Source: Basidiobolus meristosporus CBS 931.73
Taxonomy: Eukaryota > Fungi > Basidiobolomycota
Direction of reading: 5' to 3'
NCBI GenBank assembly: GCA_002104905.1
Contig: MCFE01000584.1
Location: 1 to 55,953 of the forward strand
DNA: 55,953 nt
A program made the position numbers and the translations under genes. Positions 3,201 through 22,189 of the stretch are shown in pieces (the first letter of the stretch is position 1; each line of letters starts with the position of its first letter). Below the pieces are notes generated by a model. It searched no databases, was not told where the DNA came from, and saw only the letters and a list, made by a program, of their open reading frames with translations.

Positions 3201-3224
3201 CATCCAGGTATGCCAAATATTTCC

Positions 3225-3360
3225 ACATTTTTATGGATCAGCCTGCGCAATATAGGACATACTCCATAGCAGATAAAGACACCCATGATATTGATGGATG
3301 CTCTAACCAAGATACACAGTACACAGAGCCCATGAAAGATGCCTTATATGGCAATGAGTC
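3225..3360 (+). pseudogene. Family A 3' fragment (relic)
   Basis: cagcctgcgcaa...gatggatgctctaaccaagatacacagtacacagagcccatg matches the QPAQ...EGCSDQDTQYTEPM region of the intact A genes. The 5' part is replaced by TE sequence. Confidence 0.75.
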
Positions 3361-3738
3361 TATGGAATGAACTTAAAGCCATTCAAGTTGCGTTGATTAT
3401 ATATTTCTTGCTTAATATGTAGTAGCAGAAGTATGATCCATGCCAGCACAAGAATAAGGGTAAGGCTAGAGCAGAATAAAGCGGACCCGCAATATCAGCC
3501 AGTAGTACCTTTCTGAGTAGTCAAAATGGATAAGTCAGCTGGCGCAGATAGCTGATACAATATCTGGTCAAGTTCCTGAGGGCTGTAAAACAATGGACTC
3601 CAGTATTTCGGCATATATGGCATTGTGCGGAGACTGCTCTACTTGCTAATTGCTTACATGAATAGGAGTAGTAGTGAATACGTGATCCATTAGCCTATTT
3701 ATTGTGGCGGGATCACAATAGTATTAAGCCTATTCATA

Positions 3739-4015
3739 TCATTAGCTGTCTCTGTATCTACCTCGACGGTAACATGATGTCTGATCGTCATCTTCATTCG
3801 AGTCTTGGTTTTCATCCTTGTCGGGAGTAAATAATTGCACATATGCCGACGTAGATGGTTGGAAAGTGCCTGAGCATTCTGTGCGGAGTTAGTTTAAACA
3901 TTGTCCAACCAGGGATGACATCGATGGTTCAGTCTCATGGTCTACTTATTGGTTGTCATGTGAAGCTATGGGTGTTGCAAAATACACACCGAATAGGATG
4001 AAGTGCTGTGAACAT
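3739..4015 (-). pseudogene. Family B (alpha subtype, RYRDS tail) relic
   Basis: Collinear with B genes (ggttggaaagtgcctgagcattctgtgcgg; tagctgtctctgtatctac tail), with internal deletions and frameshifts. Confidence 0.8.
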
Positions 4016-4481
4016 GAAGGTCTTGACAGAAGTATTCTTATTGCTTGTCCTACGCTGTTTCTTCCTGATATCAGTTGGTGTAATCTTGTTTGTATGTGTT
4101 GGATAGCCTAAAGAGATAGCGATTTTGTGATGGGATTTATTATGACATCAACAAAAATAAATAAACAATCCTCTTCAATTCTGATCTTGCTATACCACTA
4201 GCAATCTTTGTGAGTGTTTTGGGATATCTTCACCAGCCATCAGTCGATAGTATACTGAGCCAGATTTACGATGCATTGCATCGACCACCTTAGGTAGGTT
4301 TGGCAAAAATGCAACTCTCCATCACTTCATACATCGCCTCTACCCAATTGACCTCTATTGCACCAGATAAATCTTCAAGTCGGAACATTAACCGAGGGTT
4401 GTGTTGATTTGAAATAGAGTCATAAGAGTAGTGATAGCCAAGGGTATCAATGTGTATTCATCATAAGATTATCACAACTAT

Positions 4482-4823
4482 ATGGATGTGAATGAGGGCA
4501 AAGATGAAGGCGAAGGTGAGGACTCGATAGATGACACTTCAACTCAGCCAGAGTCATCCTACAACATGACAAACTGCAATATAGCAGATATGCAGCCAAG
4601 ACAGGCCTTGTTGGACAGAGTGAACGCTCACTCATCCAGTGATGCTGATGCCCTGTCGAACTCCAATCAGTTTGACCAAGCGCAGGTTATCGACCAAACC
4701 CTCTATCAGCCTAAGCAGCAACAGCCCCTAGATCATCATCACCCAGCCAGCCACCCGTAGCCATGTTGGACGCCAGAAGTACAAGAGATCTGCGCATAAG
4801 TGCTTCAAGAACAGATACATTGA
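4482..4823 (+). pseudogene. Family C, 5'-truncated and frameshifted copy
   Basis: The 92-aa ORF starts at the internal Met (MDVNEG) and matches C1/C2 through DQTLYQPKQ, then shifts frame. There is no signal peptide. The degenerate C tail and AATAAA follow. Confidence 0.85.
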
Positions 4824-5159
4824 ATAAATAAATATGACATTTGGCCACCTTAGATTAATATGAAACATCATCAGCCGTGATTCGTGAATTACCATACTAC
4901 AGCTGAAATATCACAAGTATATATGTATATATTGGTGTATGTATCAGTTTATTTATCGTACATTAATCATGTAGACTACGCGATATCAATGTGATGGAGT
5001 CGACAATATTAGAGAGAATGCTGATTTTCAATCTGACAAGGTGTGAGTTCATCAAAGTTAACTAACTATTGCTACCATCAATGTTGTAACCATGTTATAA
5101 TGGTTCCCATGCTATATATTCCCGAGTGTACTTGGCAATGGACTTAGTAGTTCTCAAAG

Positions 5160-5738
5160 ATGCGCGCATTCATTGTATCCTTGACCTTGGGCCTTGCTTC
5201 TCTTCAGGCCACCATTGCTGCTCCAGTCCCATGCTCCGAATCATGCAACCGTGAGCATAGAAGAGTCCGTTATCGCAGGTATTCATGCTCGGACCAAGCA
5301 AGCAACTGCTACCAGCAAGTCCAGGTTCAGCCCACTGTTGAAACACCAAACGTTCAAGTGCCACTGTTGCGTCAGGTGTTCACCACCGTGACCAGAAAGC
5401 ATGACAATCTGAACACTGCCAACGCCAACAGTGACAAGAGTCTCGATGTTCAGTTTCAAGCAGGCCCTAGCCTCGAAGTAGAAGGCTCAGCCAGCGCATC
5501 CGAGTACGCCAAACAGAAGGGTGCTGAACACTCCGAAGATGGCTCTGGTTACCCTATTGTTGTGGTTCAGCCTGCACAAGATGAGACATACTCCACACCA
5601 GTAGTGGACACCCAATGCATCGAAGGATGCTCTGACCAAGATACACAGTACTCTGAGCCCATGGAAGATGTTCAATGTGGCGACAACTGTGCTAATCAGG
5701 ACTCACAGTATACTGAGCCCATGGAAGACACTCAATGA
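5160..5738 (+). CDS. Family A secreted protein A1 (192 aa; Cys/Arg-rich N-terminus, acidic CxxxC repeats)
   Basis: Intact ATG ORF with hydrophobic signal MRAFIVSLTLGLASLQATIA|APVP. TATATA at 5113-5118 and AATAAA about 30 nt after the stop. Four near-identical intact copies. Confidence 0.9.
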   Translation: MRAFIVSLTLGLASLQATIAAPVPCSESCNREHRRVRYRRYSCSDQASNCYQQVQVQPTVETPNVQVPLLRQVFTTVTRKHDNLNTANANSDKSLDVQFQAGPSLEVEGSASASEYAKQKGAEHSEDGSGYPIVVVQPAQDETYSTPVVDTQCIEGCSDQDTQYSEPMEDVQCGDNCANQDSQYTEPMEDTQ

Positions 5739-6457
5739 CCCAACGACTGCACTTGAGCCCAAATGCAATAAAGTTACATTATTCATTTTATTTTTCGCCT
5801 CATAAGTGAGCAGAAATATAGCCATTAACAGCATGGGAGCAAAGAGCGTTTGACAAACTTAAAACCAAGCCAATTTCCACACTTCACTCTGATGATCCGA
5901 AGTCCAGTCACCAATTCAGGAGAAGGGTAGGAAACGTCTTGAAGTACTGCTTGAAGGTAGTGAGTGGCCTATTTAATATGCTCAGCGAGGGCTTAGTCAA
6001 TATGGATATCGGGCATCCTAGAGTGTATCGCTATGTCAAAAAGTCCAACTATTGCTCACCACCATTACCAGAAAACATGGTATCCTGAGTGCACATATAA
6101 TATGCACCACTAATTATAATGAAGAAAATTAGCGCTTGATATTCGCATTTCAGAGGGGACACAACCAAAATAATTCACACTGTCATGTGAGGAGTTGTTA
6201 GATGTTCTGAGCATAAAGGTTTTAACGTCGAATATGCCTAACCGAAAGGCACTGCGTATCCATATCTATGTTTGGTTATTTCGGTTGATGCTCATTCCAC
6301 TCATCCCTGTAGTCACATCTACGCTATTTTTCCTGATATCAGTTGGTGTAATCTTATTTGCAGAAGAAATGTGCGTGTTTTATAGTATGCAGAAATAGCG
6401 ATTATATGATAGGATTTATTATGAATGCCAAACCAATGTTTACATGATCCGATTGAG

Positions 6458-6892
6458 TCAAAAGCGGCCGCTGTATCTACTTCTACGGTAGCGTCGTTGA
6501 CAACGTTTGCACGATGGCTGATCGTCGTCGTCACTTGAGTCTTGAGTATCATCCTCATCGGGAGTAATTGATTGTACATATGTCGGTGCAGATGGTTGGT
6601 ACAATGTCTGATCTACTTGCTGCACTTGCTCATATTGATTCTGGTTGGAAAGTGCCTGAGCGTTCTGTGCAGAATGAGTCTGAGCGTTGTCCAACAATGG
6701 ATAGGCGTCTGAGGACTCTAGTTGATAGTATGTTGGTGCATATGACACTAATGGTTCATTGTCGGCATTGCCGCCAAAGTCCACTGGGACACCCTGGTCT
6801 ACTTGCTGGTTGTCATATGTTGCAATGGGCGATGCATAAGATGCACCGAATAGGAATACTAAGGCGGATAGAATGCGGAAAGTGCGTTGCAT
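6458..6892 (-). CDS. Family B secreted protein B1 (144 aa; acidic Q-rich body, CKRC plus Arg/Tyr tail)
   Basis: ATG at 6892 (the ORF track starts at a TTG at 6922). Signal MQRTFRILSALVFLFGASYA|SPIA. TATA-like CATAAAA about 40 nt upstream and AATAAA on the minus strand at ~6415-6420. Confidence 0.9.
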   Translation of the reverse strand: MQRTFRILSALVFLFGASYASPIATYDNQQVDQGVPVDFGGNADNEPLVSYAPTYYQLESSDAYPLLDNAQTHSAQNAQALSNQNQYEQVQQVDQTLYQPSAPTYVQSITPDEDDTQDSSDDDDQPSCKRCQRRYRRSRYSGRF

Positions 6893-7013
6893 GTTGGCTC
6901 CTGATGACACACTGGAAGGCAAACAGTTGCTTTTATGTATGGTTTGCTAGATTCATCAGCGATCATCAGCAACCAAACCCAGTTTACTAAATTATGCAGC
7001 AAAGGTGAGTAAA

Positions 7014-7096
7014 GTTAATCAGAATTTCACTTTCATTGCAATGATCAGTGAATAGGTGTTGATTAACACCGTAATCCCGGCGACCAATCACTTCAG
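7014..7096. promoter_or_regulatory. Conserved palindromic element plus CCAAT box in the divergent B/(A',C) promoter, copy 1
   Basis: GTTAATCA...TGATTAAC inverted pair around TCATTGCAATGA. TGATTAACACCGTAATCC and GCGACCAATCACTTCAG are invariant in 5 copies. Confidence 0.55.
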
Positions 7097-7611
7097 TACA
7101 TCAAGAAAAATAAATAAACATTAGTCTTCAATTTTGAGCTTGCTATACCACTTTGGAATGACAAACGCGGTAGTGAAGGGACAAACTAAAATGACTCATA
7201 CTACGCCTTTTCAAGCTATGGCTTGAAGTGAGCACACAGAAATCGCGTCGTTCTTGCGTAGTTCTCGATTTCATCGTCGAAGGCCACTAAGCTACTCTGA
7301 TTATATAGTACCCTGCAGCTATTTTTATGAGTATATTGGGATTATGAACGAATTAACATCTTCACCGGCCATCAGTCGATAGTATACTGCACTAAATTTA
7401 CCATTTAGCATTATGCATTGCATCGACCACCTCAAGTCCGCTTAGCAAAAATGTAACTCGCCATCACTTTGCTGGCCTCATATATCACCTCTATCCAAGC
7501 GATCTCTATTGCAGCAGATGAACCTAGAGTTGCGTTGATTTGAGATCGTAGATTCATAGGGATAGTGATTGCTAAGGGTATTAATGTGTACCTATCACTA
7601 TGACTATCAGC

Positions 7612-7956
7612 ATGTGGCTTTCCAAATCTTCAATGATGTAGCTACTTTTTCTTTTGGCCATCGTTGCTGCTCCAATTCCACGCTCCGAATCATGCAATCG
7701 CAAGCATAAAAGAGTGCATTATCGTAGTTCGTCATGCTCCGATCGAGCAAGTAACTGCCACCAGCAAGCCCGAGTTCTGCCAACTGTAGAGACTTCGAAT
7801 ATCTAAGTACGATTGTACGTTGAAGGATGCGTTGATCAGGATATACAGTACACTGAGCCCATGGAAGTTGCTCAGTTTGGCAATGACTGTGCCAATCAGG
7901 ACTTACTGTATGCTGACTTTATGGACGACACTCAACGTACCGACAACTGCACTTGA
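7612..7956 (+). pseudogene. Diverged family A paralogue (A') with its own signal peptide, inactivated
   Basis: Reads MWLSKSSMM*LLFLLAIVAAPIPRSESCNRKHKRVHYRSSSCSDRASNCHQQ. It has an in-frame TAG, an internal deletion and the C-terminal repeat remnant. Confidence 0.8.
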
Positions 7957-8173
7957 TTCAATAAATCTCGATTATCCATATCATTTGCTCTTAACGCCAA
8001 TCTAACTTGATTGCTAATAGCTAAACCAGGTAGTTAGTTGATGGACAACAAAAGCAGGACATAGCATGTGAGTTCCTGGCCTCAAGTGAGTCTGATACAG
8101 GGTGTAGTATAGTAGACTATGCCAAATACCACTATAAAGTGAGCTTACGACTGGTTTTACGATATTCATCAAA

Positions 8174-8728
8174 ATGCAGCTTACTCTCACTTTACTCGCT
8201 TTGTACTTTGCTTCTATCCATGCATTCCCTGCCACAGAAGATACCTCTTCTCAGGTGAGCTACGGTGACAATTTGTGCGGGGAGCAAGTAAGTCCTTGCT
8301 ACCCAGAAACGCAATCGCCTGCAGATGACTATCAGCCGGAACAGGACGAGGGTGATCACTATATGGATGAGAATGGAGGTGAAGATGAAGGCGAAGGTGC
8401 GGACTCAATGGATGGCACTACAACTCAGCCAGAGTCATCCTACAACATGCCCAGCTTCAATATAGCCGACCTGCAACCAAGACAGGCCTTGTTGGACAGA
8501 GTGAACGCGCAGTCATCCAGTGATGCTGATGCTCTGTCCAACTCTAATCAGTTTGACCAAGCGCAGGTTATCGACCAAACCCTCTATCAGCCTAAGCAGC
8601 CACAGCCCCAGATCATTATCACTCAGCCAGCCACCCGTAGCTATGGTGGAGGCCAGAAGAAGTACAAGAGGTCGGCACATAAGTACTTCAAGATCAGATA
8701 TTTCAGTGGGAATCGATACATTGATTAA
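8174..8728 (+). CDS. Family C secreted protein C1 (184 aa; very acidic body, Lys/Arg/Tyr/Phe tail)
   Basis: Intact ATG ORF with signal MQLTLTLLALYFASIHA|FPA. TATAAA at 8133-8138 and an AAATAAA poly(A) signal directly after the stop. Confidence 0.9.
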   Translation: MQLTLTLLALYFASIHAFPATEDTSSQVSYGDNLCGEQVSPCYPETQSPADDYQPEQDEGDHYMDENGGEDEGEGADSMDGTTTQPESSYNMPSFNIADLQPRQALLDRVNAQSSSDADALSNSNQFDQAQVIDQTLYQPKQPQPQIIITQPATRSYGGGQKKYKRSAHKYFKIRYFSGNRYID

Positions 8729-9072
8729 ATAAACATTTCATTTGGCCACCCTATATTAATATGAAACATCATCAGCCGTGCTTCGTGAATTACCACACTA
8801 CTGCTGAAATATCAAAAGCATATGCGTATATATTAGGGTATATATTGGTGTACTTATCAGTGTATTTATCGTGTTGTAACCAAATAAAGTACGCGATATC
8901 AATGCGATTGAGCCGATGATGGTAGAGCGAATGCTGCTTTTCAATCTGATAAAGTGTGAGTTCATCCAAGTTAACTAACTATTGCTACCATCAACGTTGT
9001 AACCATGTTATACTGGTTTCCATGCTATATATTCCCGAGTGTACTTGGCAATGAACTCAGCAGTTCTCAAAG

Positions 9073-9651
9073 ATGCGTGCATTCATTGTATCATTGATCT
9101 TGGGCCTTGCCTCTCTTCAAGCCGCCGTTGCTGCTCCAGTCCCATGCTCCGAATCATGCAACCGTGAGCATAGAAGAGTCCGTTATCGCAGGTATTCATG
9201 CTCGGACCAAGCAAGCAACTGCTACCAGCAAGTCCAGGTTCAGCCCACTGTTGAAACGCCAAACGTCCAAGCGCCATTGTTGCGTCAGGTGTTCACCACC
9301 GTGACCAGAAAGCATGACAATCTGAACACTGCCAACGCCAATAGTGACAAGAGTCTCGATGTTCAGTTTCAAGCAGGCCCTAGTCTCGAAGTAGAAGGCT
9401 CAGCCAGCGCATCCGAGTACGCCAAACAGAAGGGTGCTGAACACTCCGAAGATGGCTCTGGTTACCCCATTGTTATGGTTCAGCCTGGGCAAGATGAGAT
9501 ATACTCCACACCAGTAGTGGACACCCAATGCATCGAAGGATGCTCTGACCAAGATACACAGTACACTGAGCCCATGGTAGATGATCAATGTGGCGATGAC
9601 TGTGCTAATCAGGACTCACAGTATACTAAGCCCATGGAAGACGCTCAATGA
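9073..9651 (+). CDS. Family A secreted protein A2
   Basis: Intact 192-aa paralogue of A1 with the same promoter and 3' flank. Confidence 0.9.
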   Translation: MRAFIVSLILGLASLQAAVAAPVPCSESCNREHRRVRYRRYSCSDQASNCYQQVQVQPTVETPNVQAPLLRQVFTTVTRKHDNLNTANANSDKSLDVQFQAGPSLEVEGSASASEYAKQKGAEHSEDGSGYPIVMVQPGQDEIYSTPVVDTQCIEGCSDQDTQYTEPMVDDQCGDDCANQDSQYTKPMEDAQ

Positions 9652-10301
9652 ACCAACGACTGCACTTGAGCATAAATCCAATAAAGTTCCATTATTCATT
9701 TTTTTTTCGCCTTTTACGTGATAACAGAAATATAGTCGTTACCATCATGAAAACAAGGGTATTTGACAAACTGATGACCCAAAGTCCAGCGACTAGTCCA
9801 GGAGAAGGGTAAGAAACGTCCTGAAGTACTGCTGGAAGGTAATGGGTAGCTTATTCAATAAGTTTCTCATGGGTTTAGTCAATATGCAAATCGGGTCTCC
9901 TTGAGTGTATCGCCATTCCAAGCTAGAGTCAGCTGTTATAGAGGGTAGAATACATGATAATGTAAGGAGAATTCGGAGCGTGTCAAATCCAATAATCTGG
10001 AACTTTTGACTCATACTTATTGGTATCAGCAGAGTGAGGAAATACCCAAGCCCAACTATTGCTTACTACCATTACCAGCACATAACTAATATGCACTACA
10101 GACGAATGATTCTTATTGTAATTGAGAAAATTGGTGCTTGATCGGCTCTTTCCCTTACATTAATATCTGTTGATACTCGCCGTTGTTCCACCCATCCTTG
10201 TGGTCATGTCTCTCTTGTAACTTTTTCCTAGTATCAATTGTCAGAAACTGGAGTGATGTCGGTTATATATTACATTTTCTTATTTATTAAACCTATTCAT
10301 A

Positions 10302-10736
10302 TCAATAGCTGTCTCTGTATCTACGTCTACGGTAGCGTTGTTGACAACGTTTACACGATGGTTGATCGTCGTCGTCACTCGAGTCATGAATGTCATCCTC
10401 GTCGGGAGTAAACGATTGCACAAATGTCGGCGCAGATGGTTGGTACAATGTTTGATCTACTTGCTGCACCTGGTCGTACTGATTCTGGTTGGAAAGTGCC
10501 TGAGCGTTCTGTGCGGAATTCGTCTTCACATTGTCCAACAATGCATAGCCGTTTGGGGACTCTAGTTGATAGTATGTTGGGGTGTATGATATTGATGGTT
10601 CATTGTCGGTATTGCCACCAAAGTCCACTGGGATGCCCTGGTCTACTTGCTGGTTGTCGTACGTTGCAATGGGCGATGCATAAGATGCACCGAATAGGAA
10701 TACAAAGGCGGATAGAATGCGGAAAGTGCGTTGCAT
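10302..10736 (-). CDS. Family B secreted protein B2 (alpha-type tail RRRRYRDSY)
   Basis: Intact 144 aa from the ATG at 10736. The promoter matches B1/B3/B4/B5, while the 3' end and flank match the alpha relics. Confidence 0.88.
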   Translation of the reverse strand: MQRTFRILSAFVFLFGASYASPIATYDNQQVDQGIPVDFGGNTDNEPSISYTPTYYQLESPNGYALLDNVKTNSAQNAQALSNQNQYDQVQQVDQTLYQPSAPTFVQSFTPDEDDIHDSSDDDDQPSCKRCQQRYRRRRYRDSY

Positions 10737-10857
10737 GTTGGCTCTTGATGACACACTGGAAGGCAAACAGTTGCATTTATGTATGGTTTGCTAGATTCAT
10801 CAGCGATCATCAGCAACCAAACCCAGTTTACTAAATTATGAAGCAGAGGGGAGTAAA

Positions 10858-10940
10858 GTTAATCAGCATTTCATTTTCATTGTAATGATCGATGAGTAAT
10901 AGCTGATTAACACCGTAATCCAAGCGACCAATCACTTCAG
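10858..10940. promoter_or_regulatory. Conserved palindromic promoter element, copy 2
   Basis: Perfect 10-bp inverted pair GTTAATCAGC/GCTGATTAAC. Invariant TGATTAACACCGTAATCC and GCGACCAATCACTTCAG. Confidence 0.55.
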
Positions 10941-11440
10941 TACATGAAGAAAAATAAATAAACATTCGTCTTCAATTCTGGGCTTGGCTTACCACTTTGG
11001 AATGACAAACGCGGTAGTGAAGGGACTCGCCAAAATGACTCATACTATGCCTTTTCAAGCTATGGCTTGAAGTGAGCACACAGGAATGGCTTCATTCTTA
11101 CGTAGTTCTTGATTTCATAGTCGTAGAACGCTAGGCTACTCTGGTTATATAACAACCTGTAACAATCTTTGTGAGTGTTATGGGATCATGACTGAATTAA
11201 TATCTTCACCAGCCTTCAGTCGATAGTATACTGAGTTGAATTTACGATGTAGCATTATGCATTGCACCAATTAGCTTAGCTTAGCAAAAATGTAACTCAC
11301 CATCACCTCTGTCCAAGTGATCTTCCAGTGTAGCAGACGAATCTTCGAGTTGTGTTGATCCGAAACTGAAGAGCCGTAAGAATAGTGATTGTTAAGGGTA
11401 TTAATGTGTATTTATCATAGCACTTCAACTGCTAGTTTCT

Positions 11441-11785
11441 AATGCTCCGACCGAGCAAGTGACTGTTAACAGCAAGTCCAAGTTCTGCATACTGTTGAAA
11501 CGTCGAATGTCCAAGTCCCATTATTATGTCAAGTGCTCACCACTGATACCAAAAAACATGGCAATCTGAGCACTGCTAACGCTAATAGGGAAAAGAGTCT
11601 TAATGCCAAGCTGGCCCTAGCCTCGAAGTAGAAGGTTCAGCCAGCGCATCCGAGTACGCCAAACTGAAGAGTGCTGAGCAATCAGACGATGGCTCTAATT
11701 TCCCATTGTTGTGACTTAGCCTGCACAAGATGAGACATACACTACACCAGTAGTAGACACCCAATGCGTTGAAGGATGCGCTGAT
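11441..11785 (+). pseudogene. A' relic (5'-deleted, frameshifted)
   Basis: Matches A from CSDRAS through GPSLEVEGSASASEYAK to PVVDTQCVEGCADQD, with stops and indels. Confidence 0.8.
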
Positions 11786-12150
11786 CAAGATACTGAAAGG
11801 AATACAAGAGATCGGCTCAGATATTCTAGTGGAAATAGACAATGAACATCATTTCACTTGACCACCTTATATTAAAATGAAACATCAGCATTGATTCGTA
11901 AATCACTATACTACAGCTGGAATATCAAAAGCATATGTGCATTTATTGGTGTATTTATCAGTGTATTTATCAGTGTATTTATCCTCCTGTAATCATGCAA
12001 ACTACGCGATGATGGTAGACAGAATGCAAATTTTCAATCTGATCAAAGTTAACTAACTATTGCTGCCATCAATGTTAAAACCATATTATACTGGCTCCCA
12101 TGCTATATATTCCAGAGTGAATTCAGCAATGAACTCAGTAGTTCTTACAG

Positions 12151-12729
12151 ATGCGTACATTCATTGTATCCTTGATCTTGGGCCTTGCCTCTCTTCAAGC
12201 CACCATTGCTGCTCCAGTCCCATGCTCCGAATCATGCAACCGTGAGCATAGAAGAGTCCGTTATCGCAGGTATTCATGCTCAGACCAAGCAAGCAACTGC
12301 TACCAGCAATCCCAGGTTCAGCCCACTGTTGAAACGTCAAACGTTCAAGTGCCACTGTTGCGTCAGGTGTTCACCACCGTGACCAGAAAGCATGACAATC
12401 TGAACACTGCCAACGCCAACAGTGACAAGAGTCTCGATGTTCAGTTTCAAGCAGGCCCTAGCCTTGAAGTAGAAGGCTCAGCCAGCGCATCCGAGTACGC
12501 CAAACAGAAGGGTGCTGAATACTCAGACGATGGCTCTGGTTACCCCATTGTTATAGTTCAGCCTGCACAAGATGAGACATACTCCACACCAGTAGTGGAC
12601 ACCCAATGCATCGAAGGATGCTCTGACCAAGATACACAGTACACTGAGCCCATGGTAGATGTTCAATGTGGCGATGACTGTGCTAATCAGGACTCACAGT
12701 ATACTGAGCCCATGGAAGACACTCAATGA
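12151..12729 (+). CDS. Family A secreted protein A3
   Basis: Intact 192-aa paralogue. The upstream C gene is missing, but the C-A intergenic sequence (11860-12150) is retained. Confidence 0.9.
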   Translation: MRTFIVSLILGLASLQATIAAPVPCSESCNREHRRVRYRRYSCSDQASNCYQQSQVQPTVETSNVQVPLLRQVFTTVTRKHDNLNTANANSDKSLDVQFQAGPSLEVEGSASASEYAKQKGAEYSDDGSGYPIVIVQPAQDETYSTPVVDTQCIEGCSDQDTQYTEPMVDVQCGDDCANQDSQYTEPMEDTQ

Positions 12730-13375
12730 ACCAACGACTGCACTTGAGCCCAAATCCAATAAAGTTTCATTATTCATGTTATTTTTCGTCTCATATGTGA
12801 TAGCAGAAATATAGCCATTACCAGCATGGGAACAAGAGCATTTGACAAACTCAACACCACGCCAATTTCTTCCCTCTGATGACCCGAAGTCCAGCTACCA
12901 ATTCAGGAGAAGAGTAAGAAGCTGGTTAAGCTTGGCTATGCACGTGTTTAAGTACTGCTCGTAGGTATTGGGTGGCTTATTTAATAAGCTCAACCCGGGC
13001 CTAGTCAATATGGAGATAGGGCATCCTAGAGTGTATCGCTATCTCAAGAAGTCCAACTATTACTCACTACCATGAGCGCACATATAACATGCACCACAGA
13101 CGAGTGATTCTTACTATAATTGAGAAATTTAGCGCTTGATCGGCTCTTTCCCTTACTTCAATCTCTGTTGATACTCGCCATTATTTCACCCATCCCTGTG
13201 GGCACATCTCTTGTGTATCATATTTGAAAGCTTGTTTACAGAAGAATTGGGTGTACCTGATAGCCTACATGGACAGGGACACTGGAGTAATATCGATTGT
13301 ATGATACATTAACCTATTTATTATGCTGGGATCACCATAGTCATAAAATGTAGAAAGGCCAATAATCTGTTCTCA

Positions 13376-13792
13376 TCAATAGCTGTCTCTGTATCTACGT
13401 CTATACGCTGGCTGATTGTCATCATCACCAGAGTCTTGGTCTTCATCCTCGTCGGGAGCCAATGATTGCACATACGTCGACGCAAATGGTTGGTACAATG
13501 TCTGATCTATTTGCTGCATACTGATTCTGGCTGGGAAGTGCCTGAGCATTCTGTACGGAGTTAGTTTGAATATTGCTCAACAAGGGATAGCTAATTAGGG
13601 ACTCTAGCTGGTAATCTGCCGGCGCATATGATATTAATGGTTCAGTCTCATAGTCCACTTGGACACTCTGGTTTACTTATTGATTGCCATATGTAGCAAT
13701 GGGCAATGCATAGGATACACCGAATAGGAATACTAAGGTGGATAAAATGCGTGGATAAAATGCGTGGATAAAATTCGGAAATTACGTCGCAT
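13376..13792 (-). pseudogene. Family B alpha relic
   Basis: ATG at 13792, a 13-bp tandem duplication (gataaaatgcgtg) in the signal region, frameshifts, and an RYRDSY tail. Confidence 0.85.
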
Positions 13793-14203: not shown

Positions 14204-14638
14204 TCAAAAGCGGCCGCTGTATCTACTTCTACGGTAGCGTCGTTGACAACGTTTACACGATGGCTGGTCGTCGTCGTCACTCGTGTCTTCAGTGTCATCC
14301 TCGTCGGGAGTAAATGATGGCGCATATGTCGGTGCAGATGGTTGGTACAATGTCTGATCTACTTGCTGCACTTGCTCATATTGATTCTGGTTGGAAAGTG
14401 CCTGAGCGTTCTGTGCGGAATTAGTCTGAGCGTTGTCCAATAATGGATAGGTGTCTGGAGACTTTAGTTGATAGAATGTTGGAGTGTATGACATTAATGG
14501 CTCATTGTCGGTATTGCCACCAAAGTCCGCTGGGATACCCTGGTCTATTTGCTGGTTGTCATACGTTGTAATGGGCGACGCAGAAGATACACCGAATAGG
14601 AATACTAAGGCGGATAGAATGCGGAAAGTGCGTTGCAT
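14204..14638 (-). CDS. Family B secreted protein B3
   Basis: Intact 144 aa with the tail CKRCQRRYRRSRYSGRF, identical to B1. Confidence 0.9.
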   Translation of the reverse strand: MQRTFRILSALVFLFGVSSASPITTYDNQQIDQGIPADFGGNTDNEPLMSYTPTFYQLKSPDTYPLLDNAQTNSAQNAQALSNQNQYEQVQQVDQTLYQPSAPTYAPSFTPDEDDTEDTSDDDDQPSCKRCQRRYRRSRYSGRF

Positions 14639-15503: not shown

Positions 15504-15689
15504 TCAATGAATCTCGATTATCCATATGAGCCCATATCTTCACAAGTACTTAGTGGATAGTCAACCACAGCTGGACATGGCATGTGAATTCATGGCTTCA
15601 AGTAAGTCAGATATAGGATGCAGTATAATAGACTACGCCAAATACCACTATAAAGTGAGCTTACGACTAGTTTTACGCTATTCATCGAA

Positions 15690-16244
15690 ATGCAGCTTAC
15701 TCTCGCTTTACTCGCTTTGTACTTTGCTTCTATCCATGCATTACCCGCCACAGAAGATACCTTTTCTCAGGTTAGCAACGACAACAACTTGTGCGGGGAG
15801 CAAATAAGTCCTTGCTACCAAGAAACTCAATCGCCTGCATATGACTATCAGCCGGAACAGGATGAGGGTGATAGCTATATGGATGAGAATGAGGGCGAAG
15901 ATGAAGGCGAAGGTGAGGACTCAATGGATGATACTTCAACTCAGCCAGAGTCATCCTACAACATGCCAAACTTCAATGTAGCCGACATGCAACCCAGAAA
16001 GGCATTGTTGGACAGAGTGAACGCTCACTCATACAGTGATGCTGATGCTCTGTCGAACTCTAATCAGTTTGACCAAGCGCAGGTTATCGACCAAACCCTC
16101 TATCAGCCTAAGCAGCAACAGCCGCGGATCATCATTACCCAGCCAGCCACCCGTAGCTATGGTGGAGGCCAGAAGAAGTACAAGAGGTCGGCACATAAGT
16201 ACTTCAAGATCAGATATTTCAGTGGGAACAGATACATTGAATAA
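15690..16244 (+). CDS. Family C secreted protein C2
   Basis: Intact 184-aa paralogue of C1. TATAAA upstream and AATAAA overlapping the stop. Confidence 0.9.
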   Translation: MQLTLALLALYFASIHALPATEDTFSQVSNDNNLCGEQISPCYQETQSPAYDYQPEQDEGDSYMDENEGEDEGEGEDSMDDTSTQPESSYNMPNFNVADMQPRKALLDRVNAHSYSDADALSNSNQFDQAQVIDQTLYQPKQQQPRIIITQPATRSYGGGQKKYKRSAHKYFKIRYFSGNRYIE

Positions 16245-16563: not shown

Positions 16564-17142
16564 ATGCGTACATTCATTGTATCATTGATCTTGGGCCTTG
16601 CCTCTCTTCAAGCCGCCGTTGCTGCTCCAGTCCCATGCTCCGAATCATGCAACCGTGAGCATAGAAGAGTCCGTTATCGCAGGTATTCATGCTCGGACCA
16701 AGCAAGCAACTGCTACCAGCAAGTCCAGGTTCAGCCCACTGTTGAACCGCCAAACGTCCAAGTGCCATTGTTGCGTCAGGTGTTCACCACCGTGACCAGA
16801 AAGCATGACAATCTGAACACTGCCAACGCCAACAGTGACAAGAGTCTCGATGCTCAGTTTCAAGCAGGCCCTAGCCTCGAAGTAGAAGGTTCAGCCAGCG
16901 CATCCGAGTACGCCAAACAGAAGGGTGCTGAACACTCAGACGATGGCTCTGACTACCCCATTGTTATGGTTCAGCCTGCGCAAGATGAGACATACTCCAC
17001 ACCAGTAGTGGACACCCAATGCATCGAAGGATGTTCTGACCAAGATGCACAGTATACTGAGCCCATGGAGGATGTTCAATGTGTCGATGACTGTGCTAAT
17101 CAGGACTCACAGTATACTGAGCCCATGGAAGACACTCAATGA
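16564..17142 (+). CDS. Family A secreted protein A4
   Basis: Intact 192-aa paralogue. Confidence 0.9.
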   Translation: MRTFIVSLILGLASLQAAVAAPVPCSESCNREHRRVRYRRYSCSDQASNCYQQVQVQPTVEPPNVQVPLLRQVFTTVTRKHDNLNTANANSDKSLDAQFQAGPSLEVEGSASASEYAKQKGAEHSDDGSDYPIVMVQPAQDETYSTPVVDTQCIEGCSDQDAQYTEPMEDVQCVDDCANQDSQYTEPMEDTQ

Positions 17143-17451
17143 ACCAAAGACTGCACTTAAGTCCAAATGCAATAAAGTTACATTATTCATTTTATTTTTC
17201 GTCTCATATGTGATTGCAGAGATATAGCCATTACGAAATATGGGAACAAGAGCGTTTGACAAACTCAACACCACGCCAATCTCCATACTTCCCTCTGATG
17301 ACCCGAAGTCCAGCCACCAATTCAGGAGAGGGGTAAGAAACTGGTAAAGCTCGGCTATGCACGTCTTTAAGTCCTGCTTGGAGGTAGTGGGTGGCTCATT
17401 TAATAAGCTCAACGAGGGCTTAGTCAATATGGAGATCGGACATCCTAGAGT

Positions 17452-17694
17452 GTGGCTGACCGTCATCGTCACTCAAGTCTTGGTCCTCATCCTCGTGGGG
17501 AGTAAATGGTTACACATATGTCGACGTAGATGGTTGGAAAGTGCCTGAGCATTCTGTGCGGAGTTAGTTTAAACATTGTCCAACAACAATAGGTGACTGG
17601 GAACTCTAGCTGGGTGGGCGATGCATTGGATACACCGAATAGGAATACCAATGTGGACAAAATGCGTGAATAAAATGCGTAAATTTCGTTGCAT
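17452..17694 (-). pseudogene. Family B alpha relic (internally and 3' deleted)
   Basis: ATG at 17694. The signal-peptide remnant ILSTLVFLFGVSNASP is fused to QLEFPVTY. The tail is deleted. Confidence 0.8.
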
Positions 17695-18176
17695 ATTGGC
17701 ACTTAGTTACACACTGGAATACAAAGAGTTGCTTTTGTTTTTACCAACAATCATCAACAGCCGAAGCTCAGTTGATAGCTATTCTATGTGGCCAATCATC
17801 AATAAAAACAATCCACAGCCAATTGAACCTATGTATCATCGATCTACGTATTTCATTAGCTATACCATCATCCATTTATTGCTATCCACGATTGCTCACC
17901 ACTATTTCATTTTAGTAGTTTGTTCAATATTGCTCGCAAATTGGAGGGTACAAAACCAAAATGATTCACACTACTGTTTAAAGGTTCATTGCCAGAATGT
18001 TCATGATGCTCATTCCACTCATACCAGGGGTCACGTCTCCGCTGTTTCTTCCGGATATCAGTTGTTATAATCTTAATTGCAGAAGAAATGTGTGTGTTTT
18101 ATAGCTTGCAGAAATAGCGATTATATGATGGGATTTATTTTGAATGCCAAACTAGTGTTTACATGATCTGATTTCA

Positions 18177-18611
18177 TCAAGAGCTGCCTCTGTATCCACG
18201 TCTACGGTAGCGTCGTTGACAACGTTTACACGATGGCTGATCGTCGTCGTCACTCGAGTCTTCAGTGTCATCCTCGTCGGGAGTATTTGATTGCACATAT
18301 GTCGGTGCAGATGGTTGGTACAATGTCTGATCTACTTGCTGCACTTGCTCAAATTGATTCTGGTTGGAAAGTGCCTGAGCGTTCTGTGCAGAATTAGTCT
18401 GAGCGTTGTCCAACAATGGATAGGTGTCTGGAGACTCTAGTTGATAGTATGTTGGTGTGTATGACATTAATGGCTCATTGTCGGCATTGTCTTTAAAATC
18501 CACCGGGATGCCCTGGTCTACTTGCTGGTTGTCATACGTTGCAATGGGCGATGCATAAGATGCACCGAATAGGAATACTAAGACGGATAGAATGTGGAAA
18601 GTGCGTTGCAT
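18177..18611 (-). CDS. Family B secreted protein B4
   Basis: Intact 144 aa with the tail CKRCQRRYRRRGYRGSS. Confidence 0.9.
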   Translation of the reverse strand: MQRTFHILSVLVFLFGASYASPIATYDNQQVDQGIPVDFKDNADNEPLMSYTPTYYQLESPDTYPLLDNAQTNSAQNAQALSNQNQFEQVQQVDQTLYQPSAPTYVQSNTPDEDDTEDSSDDDDQPSCKRCQRRYRRRGYRGSS

Positions 18612-18732
18612 GTTGGCTCTTGATGACACACTGGAAGGCAAACAGTTGCATTTATGTATGCTTTGCTAGATCCATCAACGATCATCAGCAACCAAACCCA
18701 GTTTACTAAATTATGAAGCAAAGGTGAGTAAA

Positions 18733-18815
18733 GTTAATCAGCATTTCACTTTCATTGCACTGATCAGTGAGTAAGAGTTGATTAACACCGTAATCCAGGC
18801 GACCAATCACTTCAG
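18733..18815. promoter_or_regulatory. Conserved palindromic promoter element, copy 4
   Basis: Same invariant blocks. Confidence 0.5.
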
Positions 18816-18901
18816 CACATCAAGAAAAATAAATAAACATTTCTCTTCAATTCTGGGCGTGCTATACCACTTTGATATGACAGGACGAGGGTGATCACTA
18901 T

Positions 18902-19267
18902 ATGGATGAGAATGAGGGCGAAGATGAAGGCGAAGGTGAGGACTCGATGGATGGCACTACAACTCAGCCAGAGTCATCCTACAACATGCCAAACTTCAAT
19001 ATAGCCGACATGCAACCAAGGCAGGCTTTGTTGGACAGAGTGAACGCTCAGTCATCCAGTGATGCTGATGCTCTGTCCAACTCTAATCAGTTTGACCAAG
19101 CGCAGGTTATCGACCAAACCCTCTATCAGCCTAAGCAGCAACAGCCCCGGATCATTATCACTCAGCCAGCCACCCGTAGCTATGGTGGAGGCCAGAAGAA
19201 GTACAAGAGGTCGGCACATAAGTACTTCAAGATCAGATATTTCAGTGGGAATCGATACATTGATTAA
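18902..19267 (+). CDS. Family C copy C3 lacking the signal peptide (121 aa; possibly a pseudogene)
   Basis: Open from the internal Met MDENEG to the normal stop. The 5' end was removed by a deletion whose junction is at ~18878-18883. Confidence 0.5.
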   Translation: MDENEGEDEGEGEDSMDGTTTQPESSYNMPNFNIADMQPRQALLDRVNAQSSSDADALSNSNQFDQAQVIDQTLYQPKQQQPRIIITQPATRSYGGGQKKYKRSAHKYFKIRYFSGNRYID

Positions 19268-19931
19268 ATAAATATATCATTAGGCCACCTAATATTAATA
19301 TGAAACATCATCAGCCGTAATCCGTGAAATACCACACTACAGCTGAAATATCAAAAGCATATGTGTATATATTAGGGTATACATTGGTGTATTTATCAGT
19401 GTATTTATCGTGCTGTAACCATATAATCTACGCGATATCAATGCGATTGAGCCGATGATGGTAGAGCGAATGCTGCTTTTCAATCTGATAAAGTGTGAGT
19501 TCATCAAAGTTAATGAACTATTGCTACCATCACTGTTGTAACCATGTGATAATGGTTCCCATGTTATATGTTCCCGAGTGAATTTAGCAATGAACACCAG
19601 CAGAGCGATAAAATACGAAATCCTAACTATTGCTCACTACCATTACCAGCACATAACTAATATGCATTCTTATTGAAATTTTGAAAATTGGTGCTTGTTC
19701 GGCTCTTTCCCTTACCTCAATCTCTGCCGATACTCGCCGTTGTTCCACCCATCCCTTTGGTCATGTCTCTTTTGTGGCTTTTTCCTGGTGTTTATTGTCA
19801 GAAACTGGTTCGCGGAAGAATTGCGTGCATTTGATAGCTTACATCAATAGGGAAACTAGAGTGATGTCGATTTTACAATACATTTTCTTATTTATTATAC
19901 TGGGATCACAATGGTATTAAACCTATTCTTA

Positions 19932-20289
19932 TCAATAGCTGTCTCTGTATCTACCACTACGGTGTACACGATGGCTGATCGTCGTCGTCACTTGAGTCTT
20001 GGATCTCATCCTCGCCTGGGGTAAATGATTGCACATATGTTGACGTAGATGGTTGGAAAGTGCCTTAGCATTTAGTGCGGGATCAGTTTGAACATTGTCC
20101 AACAAGGGATAGGTGACTGGGGACTCCAGCTGGTAGTCAGTCGGTGCATATGGCATCGATGGTTCAGTCCCCATAGTCCACCGGGACACCTAGGTCTACT
20201 TGTTGGCTACCATATGTAGCAATGGGCGATGCACAGGATACACCGAATAGGAATACCAAGGTGGATAAGATGCGGAAATTACGTTGCAT
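19932..20289 (-). pseudogene. Family B alpha relic (frameshifted)
   Basis: From the ATG at 20289: MQRNFRILSTLVFLFGVSCASPIATYGSQQVDLGVPVDYGD*. The rest continues in another frame (ORF 19932-20189) and ends RYRDSY. Confidence 0.85.
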
Positions 20290-20898
20290 GTTACACACTG
20301 TAATGTAAACAGTTGCTTTATGTTTGATGGACAAGATTTATCAACGATCATCAGCAATTGAAGCTCAGTTGAGTGAAGCTAATCCTATGTTGATAGTTAT
20401 TCTATGTGGCCAATCATCAAAGGACAAAAATTAGGATAAAAACAATGCACAGCCAATTGAACCTATGTGCCATCGATCTACATTGCTTATATCATCATCC
20501 ATCTGTTGCTCACCACAACTACTCACCACTATTCCATTTTAGTAATTTAACCATTTATGGAAACCAAAATGATTCACACTATCATGTGAGGAGTCGTTAC
20601 CAGAATGCTGGTACCTATTGAATGTTCATTATTGTTCTCTATCATGATGCTCTGAACATATATGGCTGACAGAAGGGTGCTGCGTATTCCTATCTATACT
20701 TGATTGTTTCTGTTGATCCTCATTCCACTCATCCCTGTGGTCACGTCTCCGCTATTTCTTCCTGATGTCAGTTGGTATAATCTTGCTTGCAGAAGAAATG
20801 TGCGTTTGATAGCTTGCAGAAATAGCAATTATTTGATAGGATTATTATGAATGCCAAACTAGTGTTTACACGATCCGATTTCATCAAAAGCCGCCTCT

Positions 20899-21288
20899 CT
20901 ATCCACGTCTACGTTTACACGATGGCTGATTGTCGTCGTCACTCGAGTCTTGAGTGTCATCTTCATCGGGAGTAAATGGTGGCGCATATGTCGACGCAGA
21001 TGGTTGGTACAATGTCTGATCTACTTGCTGCACTTGCTCATATTGATTCTGGTTGGAAAGTGCCTCAGCATTCTGTGCAGAATTAGTCTGAGCGTTGTCC
21101 AACAATGGATAGGCGTCTGGGGACTCTAGTTGATAGTATGTTGATGTATATGGCATTAATGGTTCACTGTCGAAGTCCACTGGGATGCCCTGGTCTACTT
21201 GCTGGTTGTCATACGTTGCAATGGGCGTTGCATAAGATGCACCGAATAGGAATACAAAGGCGGATAGAATGCGGAAAGTGCGTTGCAT
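20899..21288 (-). CDS. Family B copy B5 (129 aa, shortened; tail damaged)
   Basis: Intact signal and body, a small internal deletion, loss of CQRRY, and a premature TAG in place of the Tyr codon of the GYRG tail. Confidence 0.65.
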   Translation of the reverse strand: MQRTFRILSAFVFLFGASYATPIATYDNQQVDQGIPVDFDSEPLMPYTSTYYQLESPDAYPLLDNAQTNSAQNAEALSNQNQYEQVQQVDQTLYQPSASTYAPPFTPDEDDTQDSSDDDNQPSCKRRRG

Positions 21289-21409
21289 GTTGGCTCTTGA
21301 TGACACACTGGAAGGCAAACAGTTGCTTTTATGTATGGTTTGCTAGATTCATCAGCGATCATCAGCAACCAAACCCAGTTTACTAAATTATGAAGCAAAG
21401 GTGAGTAAA

Positions 21410-21492
21410 GTTAATCAGCGTTTCACTTTCATTGCAATGATCAGTGAATAGGGGTTGATTAACACCGTAATCCAGGCGACCAATCACTTCAG
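21410..21492. promoter_or_regulatory. Conserved palindromic promoter element, copy 5
   Basis: Retains TTCACT-TCATTGCAATGA-AGTGAA and the invariant blocks. Confidence 0.5.
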
Positions 21493-21774
21493 TACATGAA
21501 GAAAAGTAAATAAAGATTTCTCTTCAATTCCACTTTGGAATGGCATTTGCGGTTGTGAAGAGATAAACCACAATGATTCATACTATGGCTTGAGGTGAGC
21601 ACACAGGAATGGCGTCGTTCTTACGTAGTTCTTAATTCCATTGCCGTAGAATGCTAAGCTACTCTCGTGATAAAGAAGCCTGTAGTTACTTTGTGGGATT
21701 ACGGATGAATTAATATCTTTACTGCCATCATTCGATAGTATACTGAGCTATATTTAGGGTTCTGTCTTTGACCA

Positions 21775-22109
21775 AGTACCAACGTTGCGTCAAGTGTTCA
21801 CCACCGTGACCAGAAAGCATGGCTATCTGAACACTATTAGCACCATTAGTGACAAAAGTCTCAGTGTTAACTTCAAGCAGACCCAACCTCGAAGTAGAAG
21901 GTTCAGCCAGTGCATCTGAGTACGCCAAACTGAAGGGGGCTGAACACTCTGATTACCCCATTATTATGATTCAGCCCGCACAAGAGGAGATCTACTCCAC
22001 ACCGGAAGTTGAAGGGAGCCCTTATCCTATGTGGCGATGATTGTGCTAATCAGGACTCGAAGTATACTTATCCTGTAGTGACACTGAATGTACCGACGAC
22101 TGCACTTAA
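21775..22109 (+). pseudogene. A' relic
   Basis: LRQVFTTVTRKH...PNLEVEGSASASEYAKLKGAEHS...CGDDCANQDS...DTECTDDCT* spread over several frames. Confidence 0.8.
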
Positions 22110-22189
22110 TTACCCATATTATTTGCTGTTTTCTGTGAAAAGAGCAGTGATTCACTACAGCATTTTCTTTGAAAGGAGCACAACAACAT

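What the first reader, a model, noticed from the sequence alone, without database searches (positions are those of the whole stretch)
3225..22110. Tandem, three-family secreted-protein module (C-A><B) amplified about 5 times: candidate undescribed multi-component secreted system
Seen: three protein families with different overall sequences, each with a signal peptide, recur in fixed order and orientation. The order is [A']-C-A on the plus strand, convergent with [B-alpha]-B on the minus strand, with a period of about 3-4.4 kb. There are 10 fully intact genes, and each family has a TATA(-like) box about 35-45 nt before the ATG and an AATAAA near the stop. All three share a charge-block design and motifs (separate findings below). 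Inference: co-amplification as a unit, with shared promoters, suggests a co-expressed, high-dose, stoichiometric product rather than enzymes. Candidates are a spore or conidial coat/adhesive, a fibre, or a cocktail of processed peptides or effectors. I recognise no Pfam domain in them.
Basis: partly seen in the sequence, partly recalled or inferred. Interest (0 to 1): 0.88.

Follow-up and report, generated by a model that had tools for sequence, protein, structure and literature searches.

The report
Amplified split secreted disordered-protein genes, Basidiobolus
A gut-associated fungus (Basidiobolus meristosporus) carries a real five-unit tandem array of small secreted, disordered proteins found only in this genus; the "three families" are pieces of one two-part protein that is still a single gene in a sister species, and their function is untested.

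Summary
Window 3.2-22.1 kb carries about five tandem units (spacing 2.7-4.4 kb) ordered [A']-C-A> <[B-alpha]-B. There are 11 intact single-exon ORFs with signal peptides (4 A, 5 B, 2 C) plus decayed copies. Each family has a TATA-like box at a fixed distance from the ATG and an AATAAA at or near the stop.

The interpretation needs correcting.
- The families are not independent. B and C are paralogs (35% identity, shared core ALLD..ALSNSNQFDQAQ.VDQTLYQP). A and C share an N-terminal module.
- B. ranarum has single-exon ORFs that join the A core to a B-type or C-type core. So A, B and C are derivatives of one two-part protein.
- The C-A><B unit is not conserved in B. ranarum, which has A-only and C-only arrays.

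A HMMER profile scan of 1.84 billion representative proteins found 45 clusters, all from these two Basidiobolus species. There is no Pfam or PDB match, and AlphaFold predicts disorder. dN/dS is 0.2-0.5. The whole array recurs, collinear at 94-97% identity, on at least three other scaffolds.

Function is unknown and expression is untested. My best guess (about 0.35) is a bulk extracellular self-associating material (coat or adhesive matrix). The rivals are cationic-peptide precursors and host or microbe effectors. First-stage notes of this scan flagged the same cassette on other scaffolds of this genome.

The parts
3170..3355 (+). A' fragment (decayed A copy)
   Evidence: tblastn to A residues 103-175, 47% identity
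3754..4014 (-). B-alpha relic (diverged, degenerate B copy)
   Evidence: tblastn to B, 32% identity
4476..4821 (+). C copy that is broken: it lacks the N-terminus and changes frame near 4726
   Evidence: tblastn in two pieces, 83% and 76% identity; the ORF 4482-4760 covers only part of it
5160..5738 (+). A gene copy 1 (192 aa, signal peptide, 8 Cys, conserved A core at residues 67-121)
   Evidence: TATA-like box at -47, AATAAA at +29
6458..6892 (-). B gene copy 1 (144 aa from the ATG; signal peptide, acidic body, B/C core, CxxC cationic tail)
   Evidence: the annotated paralogs are also 144 aa
7642..7935 (+). A' fragment
   Evidence: tblastn in two pieces, 62-64% identity
8174..8728 (+). C gene copy 1 (184 aa; signal peptide, Cx6C module, acidic linker, B/C core, basic and aromatic tail)
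   Evidence: TATA box at -41, AATAAA overlapping the stop
9073..9651 (+). A gene copy 2
10302..10736 (-). B gene copy 2
11437..11797 (+). A' pseudogene (three frame-shifted pieces)
12151..12729 (+). A gene copy 3
13406..13751 (-). B-alpha pseudogene (two pieces, 67-71% identity to B)
14204..14638 (-). B gene copy 3
15690..16244 (+). C gene copy 2
16564..17142 (+). A gene copy 4
17444..17666 (-). B-alpha relics
18177..18611 (-). B gene copy 4
18881..19267 (+). C copy without its signal peptide and N-terminal module (matches C residues 57-184, 95% identity)
19966..20289 (-). B-alpha copy (48% identity to B; only a partial ORF)
20899..21288 (-). B gene copy 5 (129 aa; the cationic tail is cut short)
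   Evidence: P0043
21773..22077 (+). A' fragment that closes the array

Best explanation
The locus is a tandem array of a superfamily of small, secreted, intrinsically disordered proteins found only in Basidiobolus.

The ancestral-type protein still exists as single-exon ORFs in B. ranarum. It has a signal peptide, a Cx6C module, an 'A core' (PLLRQVFTTVTRKHDNLNTA...GPSLE.EG), a variable low-complexity linker, a 'B/C core' (ALLD..ALSNSNQFDQAQ.VDQTLYQP) and a basic, aromatic tail.

In B. meristosporus this two-part protein occurs as separate genes. A keeps the N-terminal half. B and C keep the C-terminal half, and C also keeps the N-terminal module. The genes were amplified together as a C-A><B unit, about five times in tandem. 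The whole array was then copied to at least four places in the assembly.

Inferred mechanism, not shown: the products are exported in bulk and act together outside the cell as a self-associating material, such as a surface coat or an adhesive matrix. In this reading the conserved A and B/C cores are the contact modules. The acidic blocks and the Lys/Arg-Tyr/Phe tails would drive electrostatic and cation-pi assembly. Co-amplification would keep the two halves in balance.

The descriptive part is about 0.9 likely. The material or assembly mechanism is about 0.35 likely.
For: Shown by tool results:
- Array anatomy.
- Organism and paralogs.
- B and C are paralogs.
- A and C share an N-terminal module: hhalign E 6e-6 with the signal peptide, 4e-3 without it.
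- B. ranarum has fused single-exon ORFs: P0076 (L003:3770-4735), P0078 (L010:5900-6985) and P0081 (L009:86-856).
- P0081 matches window A at E 6e-17 and window B at E 1e-11, in separate stretches.
- In the core trees, the B-only genes of B. meristosporus group with the A+B fused proteins of B. ranarum (98/96), and the A-only genes group with the same fused set (92/92).
- All 45 HMMER clusters among 1.84 billion representatives come from the genus.
- Purifying selection: dN/dS 0.21-0.48 in 12 of 13 pairs.
- Between species the cores are 66-68% identical, against 14-39% for the linkers and charge blocks.
- Predicted disorder: pLDDT 40 for A and 52 for fused P0076, where the only secondary-structure element called is the signal-peptide helix.
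- Same-length single-exon gene models on other scaffolds, and array collinearity at 94-97%.
- Charge blocks.

Lead only: the language-model neighbours of P0076 are caseins, enamelin, MEPE and cuticular proteins, at scores of 0.75-0.79.
Against: - There is no expression or protein evidence. No RNA run was listed. The small runs X3 and X4 cover only the genes, but that pattern is equally expected from high-copy DNA.
- No fold or homology ties the family to any known adhesive or wall protein.
- There is no GPI signal or other known wall-anchoring motif.
- The charge blocks that the assembly idea relies on are poorly conserved, and one fused member (P0029) lacks a cationic tail.
- There is no outgroup, so fusion in B. 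ranarum is as possible as fission in B. meristosporus.
- The multiple array copies could partly be haplotype or homeolog redundancy of the assembly.
Confidence: 0.35

Rival explanations
1. The genes encode precursors of cationic peptides with antimicrobial or signalling roles. The acidic body would act as a neutralising propiece. A Kex2-type protease would cut at the dibasic sites and release the basic Cys- or Tyr-rich tail: CQRRYRRSRYSGRF-like in B, SAHKYFKIRYFSGNRY-like in C, and the N-terminal RRVRYRRY block in A. Gene amplification would raise the dose for competition in the herptile gut.
For: - KR, RR or KK sites lie just before the tails.
- The window's B and C have an acidic body plus a cationic tail.
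- The C tail is 56% identical between species.
- B. meristosporus is reported as the fungal strain richest in Kex2-processed repeat proteins (PMC7329392).
- Other first-stage notes on this genome list amplified cationic prepropeptide families (unchecked).
Against: - The best-conserved parts are the neutral cores, not the cationic blocks.
- The dibasic sites are not conserved in position or type: KR in B. meristosporus C, KK in B. ranarum, and none in the tail of P0076.
- The cationic block of A is absent from B. ranarum A.
- P0029 has no cationic tail.
- These proteins lack the repeat-plus-spacer layout of Kex2-processed repeat proteins.
Confidence: 0.25
2. The genes are lineage-specific secreted effectors used against an animal host, insect vector or gut microbes. 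On this reading they were expanded in a repeat-rich genome region, as in the effector clusters of plant-pathogenic fungi.
For: The proteins are small, secreted and restricted to the genus. They form a tandem cluster next to a decayed Ty3/Gypsy element. The genus is animal-associated (PMC9391592).
Against: - dN/dS is well below 1, with no sign of diversifying selection.
- Dozens of near-identical copies point to dosage rather than diversification.
- The proteins have no fold at all.
- The genus also grows as a saprobe.
Confidence: 0.15
3. The array is a passively amplified segment with no important function of its own. It would have arisen by segmental duplication, or reflect assembly redundancy, in a genome prone to amplification.
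For: Many decayed copies (A', B-alpha, broken C) lie in every unit. The whole array is repeated on several scaffolds. Other amplified cassettes are noted in this genome (unchecked).
Against: - The ORFs stay intact, with dN/dS of 0.2-0.5.
- Coding parts are 84-96% identical between units, while one flank, the stretch upstream of A, drops to 62-69% in three of its four other copies (family D6).
- Promoter boxes keep fixed positions.
- The cores are conserved across two species.
Confidence: 0.1

Closest known systems
Tandem clusters of lineage-specific small secreted proteins in fungi (for example the effector gene clusters of smut and rust fungi; from general knowledge)
   Same: Signal peptide, no known domain, restriction to a genus, tandem amplification, and transposon remnants nearby.
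   Different: Selection is purifying, not diversifying. The copies are near-identical and very numerous. The proteins are fully disordered polyampholytes. The unit combines the two halves of one ancestral protein. The organism is a herptile-gut and saprobic fungus.
Kex2-processed repeat proteins (KEPs; PMC7329392), including repellent-type and pheromone-type precursors
   Same: Secreted precursors with dibasic sites. B. meristosporus is reported as the strain with most KEPs (43).
   Different: A, B and C have no tandem peptide repeats separated by KR or RR. The 20-aa Cys repeats of A have no dibasic spacers. Five accessions from this superfamily (three close A paralogs and two divergent C-type relatives) were absent from the held supplement text, which lists no Basidiobolus KEP accessions.
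Secretory calcium-binding phosphoproteins (caseins, enamelin, MEPE)
   Same: Secreted, disordered, acidic-block proteins encoded in tandem clusters and made in bulk. They are the nearest language-model neighbours of fused P0076 (scores 0.75-0.79, a lead only).
   Different: There is no sequence homology. They are vertebrate proteins. No phosphorylation or mineral role has been tested here.
Oppositely charged adhesive proteins of mussels and sandcastle worms (complex coacervates; from general knowledge)
   Same: Lys/Arg plus Tyr/Phe-rich segments (KKYKRSAHKYFKIRYF) sit beside strongly acidic Ser/Asp blocks (DSSDDDD), and several co-secreted partners are encoded.
   Different: This is an analogy of composition only. 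There is no homology, and no evidence of DOPA, phosphoserine or adhesion.
Anionic-propiece precursors of cationic antimicrobial peptides (defensin or cathelicidin logic; from general knowledge)
   Same: Signal peptide, acidic pro-region, short cationic Cys-containing end, and dibasic sites.
   Different: There is no defensin Cys pattern. The cationic parts are less conserved than the neutral cores. Activity is untested.

Membership tests
Any Pfam family | A match to a curated profile above, or at least near, the gathering score | tested here: not met
   A and B gave 0 families at E<=1. C gave only Lig_chan at 13 bits against a cutoff of 30.8, over its signal peptide.
CBM1, C2H2, C3H1 and SCP (automatic UniRef labels on some paralogs) | The corresponding domain profile matches the protein | tested here: not met
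   No Pfam hit for A, B or C at E<=1. The labels differ among related members of the same families. I read them as pattern matches to Cys/His spacing.
Kex2-processed repeat proteins (KEPs) | A signal peptide plus tandem peptide repeats separated by KR or RR sites | tested here: not met
   A signal peptide is present. The dibasic sites are few (2-3 per protein) and do not separate repeats. The 20-aa repeats of A have no dibasic spacers.
Kex2-processed repeat proteins (KEPs) | Listed among the 43 B. meristosporus KEPs of PMC7329392 | tested here: inconclusive
   Five accessions from the superfamily (three close A paralogs, two divergent C-type relatives) were not found, but the held supplement text lists no Basidiobolus KEP accessions at all.
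Hydrophobins | Eight Cys in the C..CC..C..C..CC..C pattern, with a Pfam hydrophobin match | tested here: not met
   A has 8 Cys, but as CxxxC and Cx6C pairs with no adjacent CC. There is no Pfam hit.
Anionic-propiece cationic peptide precursors | Signal peptide, acidic pro-region and cationic end | tested here: met
   Charge per 15-aa block: B runs from -5 to +4 at the end; C has -7 in the middle and +4, +4 near the end; A has +4 near the N-terminus and then -3 to -4. This holds for the window's proteins only.
Anionic-propiece cationic peptide precursors | A conserved processing site and a conserved mature peptide across relatives | tested here: inconclusive
   The C tail is 56% conserved, but the dibasic sites shift (KR, KK or none). 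The cationic block of A is not conserved in B. ranarum.
Anionic-propiece cationic peptide precursors | The released peptide has antimicrobial or signalling activity | not testable with these tools
   This needs peptide chemistry and bioassays.
Two-part Basidiobolus superfamily (defined here) | Contains the A core and/or the B/C core, as detected by HMMs built from alignments A4 and A3 | tested here: met
   51 proteins carry the A core, 69 carry the B/C core and 13 carry both. Seven of the 13 are in A-then-B/C order. Six of those seven are from B. ranarum. Three of them (P0076, P0078, P0081) were checked and are single-exon ORFs.

The most novel reading that the evidence does not exclude
This would be a genus-specific, two-component extracellular assembly system. 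A single disordered two-part protein (A core plus B/C core) was split into separately encoded partners. The partners were then co-amplified, giving roughly 150-200 distinct predicted proteins over both species (my sum of the cluster sizes), most of them from B. meristosporus. The result would be a bulk self-assembling material of a previously unknown protein class, for example the sticky tip of the insect-borne spores or a gut-stage surface coat.
Probability: 0.25. Interest if true: 0.7.

Novelty: new variant of a known kind. Interest (0 to 1): 0.5.

Why it matters
Clusters of orphan secreted proteins are common in fungi and usually cannot be interpreted. Here the sister species supplies a natural fusion. 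It shows which of the co-amplified genes belong together and which roughly 50-residue cores matter.

That gives a concrete binding and assembly test for a protein class with no known relatives. The family accounts for a visible share of the gene models of an animal-associated early-diverging fungus that can infect people.

If the products turn out to be an adhesive or coat material, or a family of cationic peptides, they would be a new type of biomaterial or antimicrobial precursor. They might also help explain how Basidiobolus spores stick to insect carriers or how the fungus persists in herptile guts.

Tried and rejected
- **Pfam scan of A, B and C** and **PDB sequence-profile searches**: nothing found.
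- **ESM Atlas searches**: scores were all below 0.8, so they are leads only.
- **AlphaFold2 models** of A and of fused P0076 were disordered. I therefore ran no fold search, because matches to a low-confidence model are meaningless.
- **A core versus B/C core as internal repeats of each other:** they look alike by eye (xLLxxV...K...L[NS]x[AS]N...YQxxP), but hhalign gives E 0.1 and BLASTP E 1.9. Not significant, so not claimed.
- **RNA evidence:** no RNA run was listed. Laying four runs showed deep DNA coverage everywhere in X1 and X2. The small contigs of X3 and X4 lie on the genes only, which high copy number explains equally well. They are not counted as expression.
- **KEP membership:** not supported.
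- **C-to-A 'fused' gene models of B. meristosporus** (P0007, P0015, P0022, P0028, P0065, P0070): P0015 and P0022 translate the spacer between C and A. I read the whole group as run-on models across neighbouring genes, and I did not use them as evidence of fusion.
- **Literature searches** for a description of the family found none.

Full report
**1. What is there**

The window is a scaffold of Basidiobolus meristosporus CBS 931.73. The closest database proteins are K493DRAFT_* models, and the window's own proteins appear in the hit lists.

Between about 3.2 and 22.1 kb, ORF listing, repeat finding and a tblastn map with one A, one B and one C as queries show five tandem units. Start-to-start spacing is 2.7-4.4 kb. 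Each unit is ordered [A' relic]-C-A on the plus strand, convergent with [B-alpha relic]-B on the minus strand.

Intact ORFs are:
- four A (192 aa, 93-95% identical);
- five B (four of 144 aa and one of 129 aa with a shortened tail);
- two C (184 aa).

Units 0 and 4 carry broken or N-terminally truncated C copies. Unit 2 has no C and unit 4 has no A. The A' and B-alpha elements are frame-shifted relics.

The JGI gene models for paralogs on other scaffolds have the same lengths and are single-exon.

- The TATA-like box is at -47 in every A copy, -45 in every B copy and -41 in both C copies.
- AATAAA lies 29 nt after the stop in A and 14 or 38 nt after it in four of five B copies. In C it overlaps the stop codon.

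**2. The three families are not independent**

- B and C align over a shared core, ALLD..(H)S....A.ALSN.NQ(F/Y).Q.Q..DQTLYQP, and a basic tail. They are 35% identical, and 15 core positions (L106-P140 of C) stay invariant across 19 sequences from two species.
- A and C share the signal peptide and a following V.Y....C..Q...C(Y)Q module. hhalign gives E 6e-6, or 4e-3 once the signal peptides are removed.
- A has its own conserved core, PLLRQVFTTVTRKHDNLNTA.A...K...V.(Y/F)Q.GPSLE.EG.

**3. The key comparison with B. ranarum**

The C-A><B unit is not conserved in B. ranarum. One 8.7-kb contig carries five A genes head to tail (L001). One 11.7-kb contig, of which 11.2 kb was fetched as L002, carries eight C-like genes head to tail.

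B. ranarum does have proteins that join an A core to a B/C core in one chain:
- With a C-type core and tail: P0076, P0078 and P0079.
- With a B-type core: P0081, P0029 and the partial P0090. The tail differs among them. In P0081 it is strongly cationic and Cys-rich, in P0090 it is Cys-rich, and in P0029 it is short and not cationic.

I checked three on DNA. In each the gene length equals the protein length plus a stop, so each is a continuous single-exon ORF: L003:3770-4735, L010:5900-6985 and L009:86-856.

P0081 matches window A at E 6e-17 (its residues 64-112) and window B at E 1e-11 (its residues 125-210).

P0076 and P0078 have housekeeping genes nearby on their contigs (RNA cyclase, a histidine phosphatase and a tRNA-splicing endonuclease near P0076; a 2-oxoacid dehydrogenase and an acetyltransferase near P0078). 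P0076 is the only family member found on its contig.

In trees of the two cores (short alignments, so only the strong splits count):
- The B-only genes of B. meristosporus fall in one clade with the A+B fused proteins of B. ranarum (98/96).
- The A-only genes of B. meristosporus fall in the half of the A-core tree that holds the same fused set (92/92).

So A and B of this window correspond to the two halves of what is one gene in the sister species. C corresponds to a two-part protein that has lost its A core but kept the N-terminal module. That explains why A and C share the module.

Without an outgroup I cannot say whether fission or fusion came first. Two fused types with the same domain order make an ancestral fused state the more economical reading. 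Either way, this supports a functional link between A and B/C more directly than co-amplification does.

B. meristosporus also has an A-then-C junction on scaffold MCFE01000194 (L004:56-1124), but with a frame change inside A.

**4. Range and copy number**

I built a HMMER profile from an alignment of fused, A, C and B members (A5) and scanned 1.84 billion representative proteins. It found 45 clusters. The 17 that had already appeared in the earlier searches, and the 28 new ones that I looked up, all come from B. meristosporus or B. ranarum.

The 90%-identity cluster of A alone holds 32 distinct sequences. Its 15 listed members lie on 10 scaffolds.

The window's array is collinear over about 16 kb with scaffold MCFE01000283 at 94-97% identity, and largely collinear with two more scaffolds. 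Units within the array are less alike (about 86-92%) than corresponding units between arrays. So tandem amplification came first and array-level copying followed. Some of that copying may be haplotype or homeolog redundancy.

A more diverged version of the cluster (A 60%, B 50-55%, C 41-76% identical to the window's proteins; A and C copies on the strand opposite B, as in the window) lies on MCFE01001035.

**5. Are they real genes?**

- Pairwise dN/dS among the window's copies is 0.21-0.48 for 12 of 13 pairs, and 0.82 for one B pair.
- Coding parts are 84-96% identical between units. One flank, the stretch upstream of A, drops to 62-69% in three of its four other copies (family D6).
- Between species, the cores are 66-68% identical, against 14-39% for the linkers and charge blocks.
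- Decayed copies beside the intact ones show what happens without selection.

Transcription could not be checked. No RNA run was listed, and the laid runs are uninformative on this point.

**6. What kind of protein**

- There is no Pfam family and no PDB relative by profile.
- AlphaFold2 gives mean pLDDT 40 for A. For fused P0076, with a 41-sequence alignment, it gives 52, and the only secondary-structure element called is the signal-peptide helix. The Atlas's own model of P0076 is also poor (pTM 0.12).
- The window's proteins are block polyampholytes:
  - A has a cationic Cys-containing N-terminal block, followed by an acidic tail with two or three 20-aa Cys repeats.
  - B has an acidic body and a CKRCQRRYRR.RY tail.
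  - C has a strongly acidic middle and a KKYKRSAHKYFKIRYFSGNRY tail.
- This layout is not general. B. ranarum A is nearly neutral, P0029 has no cationic tail, and the linkers of other members are Met- or His-rich.
- The language-model neighbours of P0076 are caseins, enamelin, MEPE and cuticular proteins. Their scores are below the level where such hits mean anything, so they are only a lead.

**7. Explanation and rivals**

The descriptive account is well supported: a genus-restricted, secreted, disordered, two-part superfamily, split and co-amplified in B. meristosporus.

For function I rank four readings.
- **Bulk extracellular self-associating material, about 0.35.** The cores would act as contact modules and the charged and aromatic blocks would drive assembly. 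This fits the split-partner co-amplification, the dosage-type amplification under purifying selection, the disorder, and the short beta-prone segments (VFTTVT, QIIITQ) set in Q/N-rich cores.
- **Precursors of cationic peptides released at dibasic sites, about 0.25.** This fits the tails and the fungus's gut ecology. It fits poorly with the cores being the most conserved parts and with the shifting dibasic sites.
- **Host or microbe effectors, about 0.15.**
- **Passive amplification without a function of its own, about 0.1.**

None of these can be settled without expression and protein data.

**8. Novelty**

No paper found describes these proteins. They are annotated as hypothetical, and the scattered automatic labels (CBM1, C2H2, C3H1, SCP) are not supported by Pfam.

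The family is new by sequence. Amplified orphan secreted-protein clusters are a familiar kind. The unusual feature is that the co-amplified unit pairs the separated halves of one protein.

First-stage notes of this scan flagged what looks like the same cassette on other scaffolds of this genome (s1-192788, s1-218885, s1-209653). I confirmed such copies myself on three other scaffolds, but I did not check that they are the pieces those notes refer to.

Noticed in passing
window 26605-30208 (+): A decayed Ty3/Gypsy-type retrotransposon, broken into several ORFs: gag with a zinc knuckle, reverse transcriptase, RNase H, and integrase with a Tf2-type SH3 domain. It lies about 4.5 kb beyond the array.
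   Followed up: partly
window 32712-33818 (-), 43495-44136 (+), 44490-44894 (+): ORFs without a Pfam match (two of the three were scanned) that share a repeated motif, 'KCQV.GRV..RDKQA.TDA...L'. This may be another repeated or mobile-element-borne family in the window.
   Followed up: no
window 22190-23023 (-): A 277-aa ORF directly after the array, with no Pfam match. I did not study it further.
   Followed up: no
L010:5900-6985 (B. ranarum P0078) and B. meristosporus P0083/P0080: The linkers of some superfamily members are tandem His-rich (KPKKHHTWE, six copies) and Met-rich (MEMPTMEKT repeats; MDMDMNMDM) stretches in place of acidic blocks. This composition is reminiscent of metal-binding disordered proteins.
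   Followed up: no
B. meristosporus scaffold MCFE01000194, L004:56-1124: An A copy runs directly into a C copy that lacks its own signal peptide, with a frame change inside A near position 433. The public gene model bridges the frame change with an intron. This may be a native A-C fusion or a decayed one.
   Followed up: partly
window 7401-13400, runs X1 and X2: The summed word depth over the genes is 2-5 times the depth over the spacers in the deep DNA runs. This is consistent with many more genomic copies of the coding parts than of the intergenic parts.
   Followed up: partly
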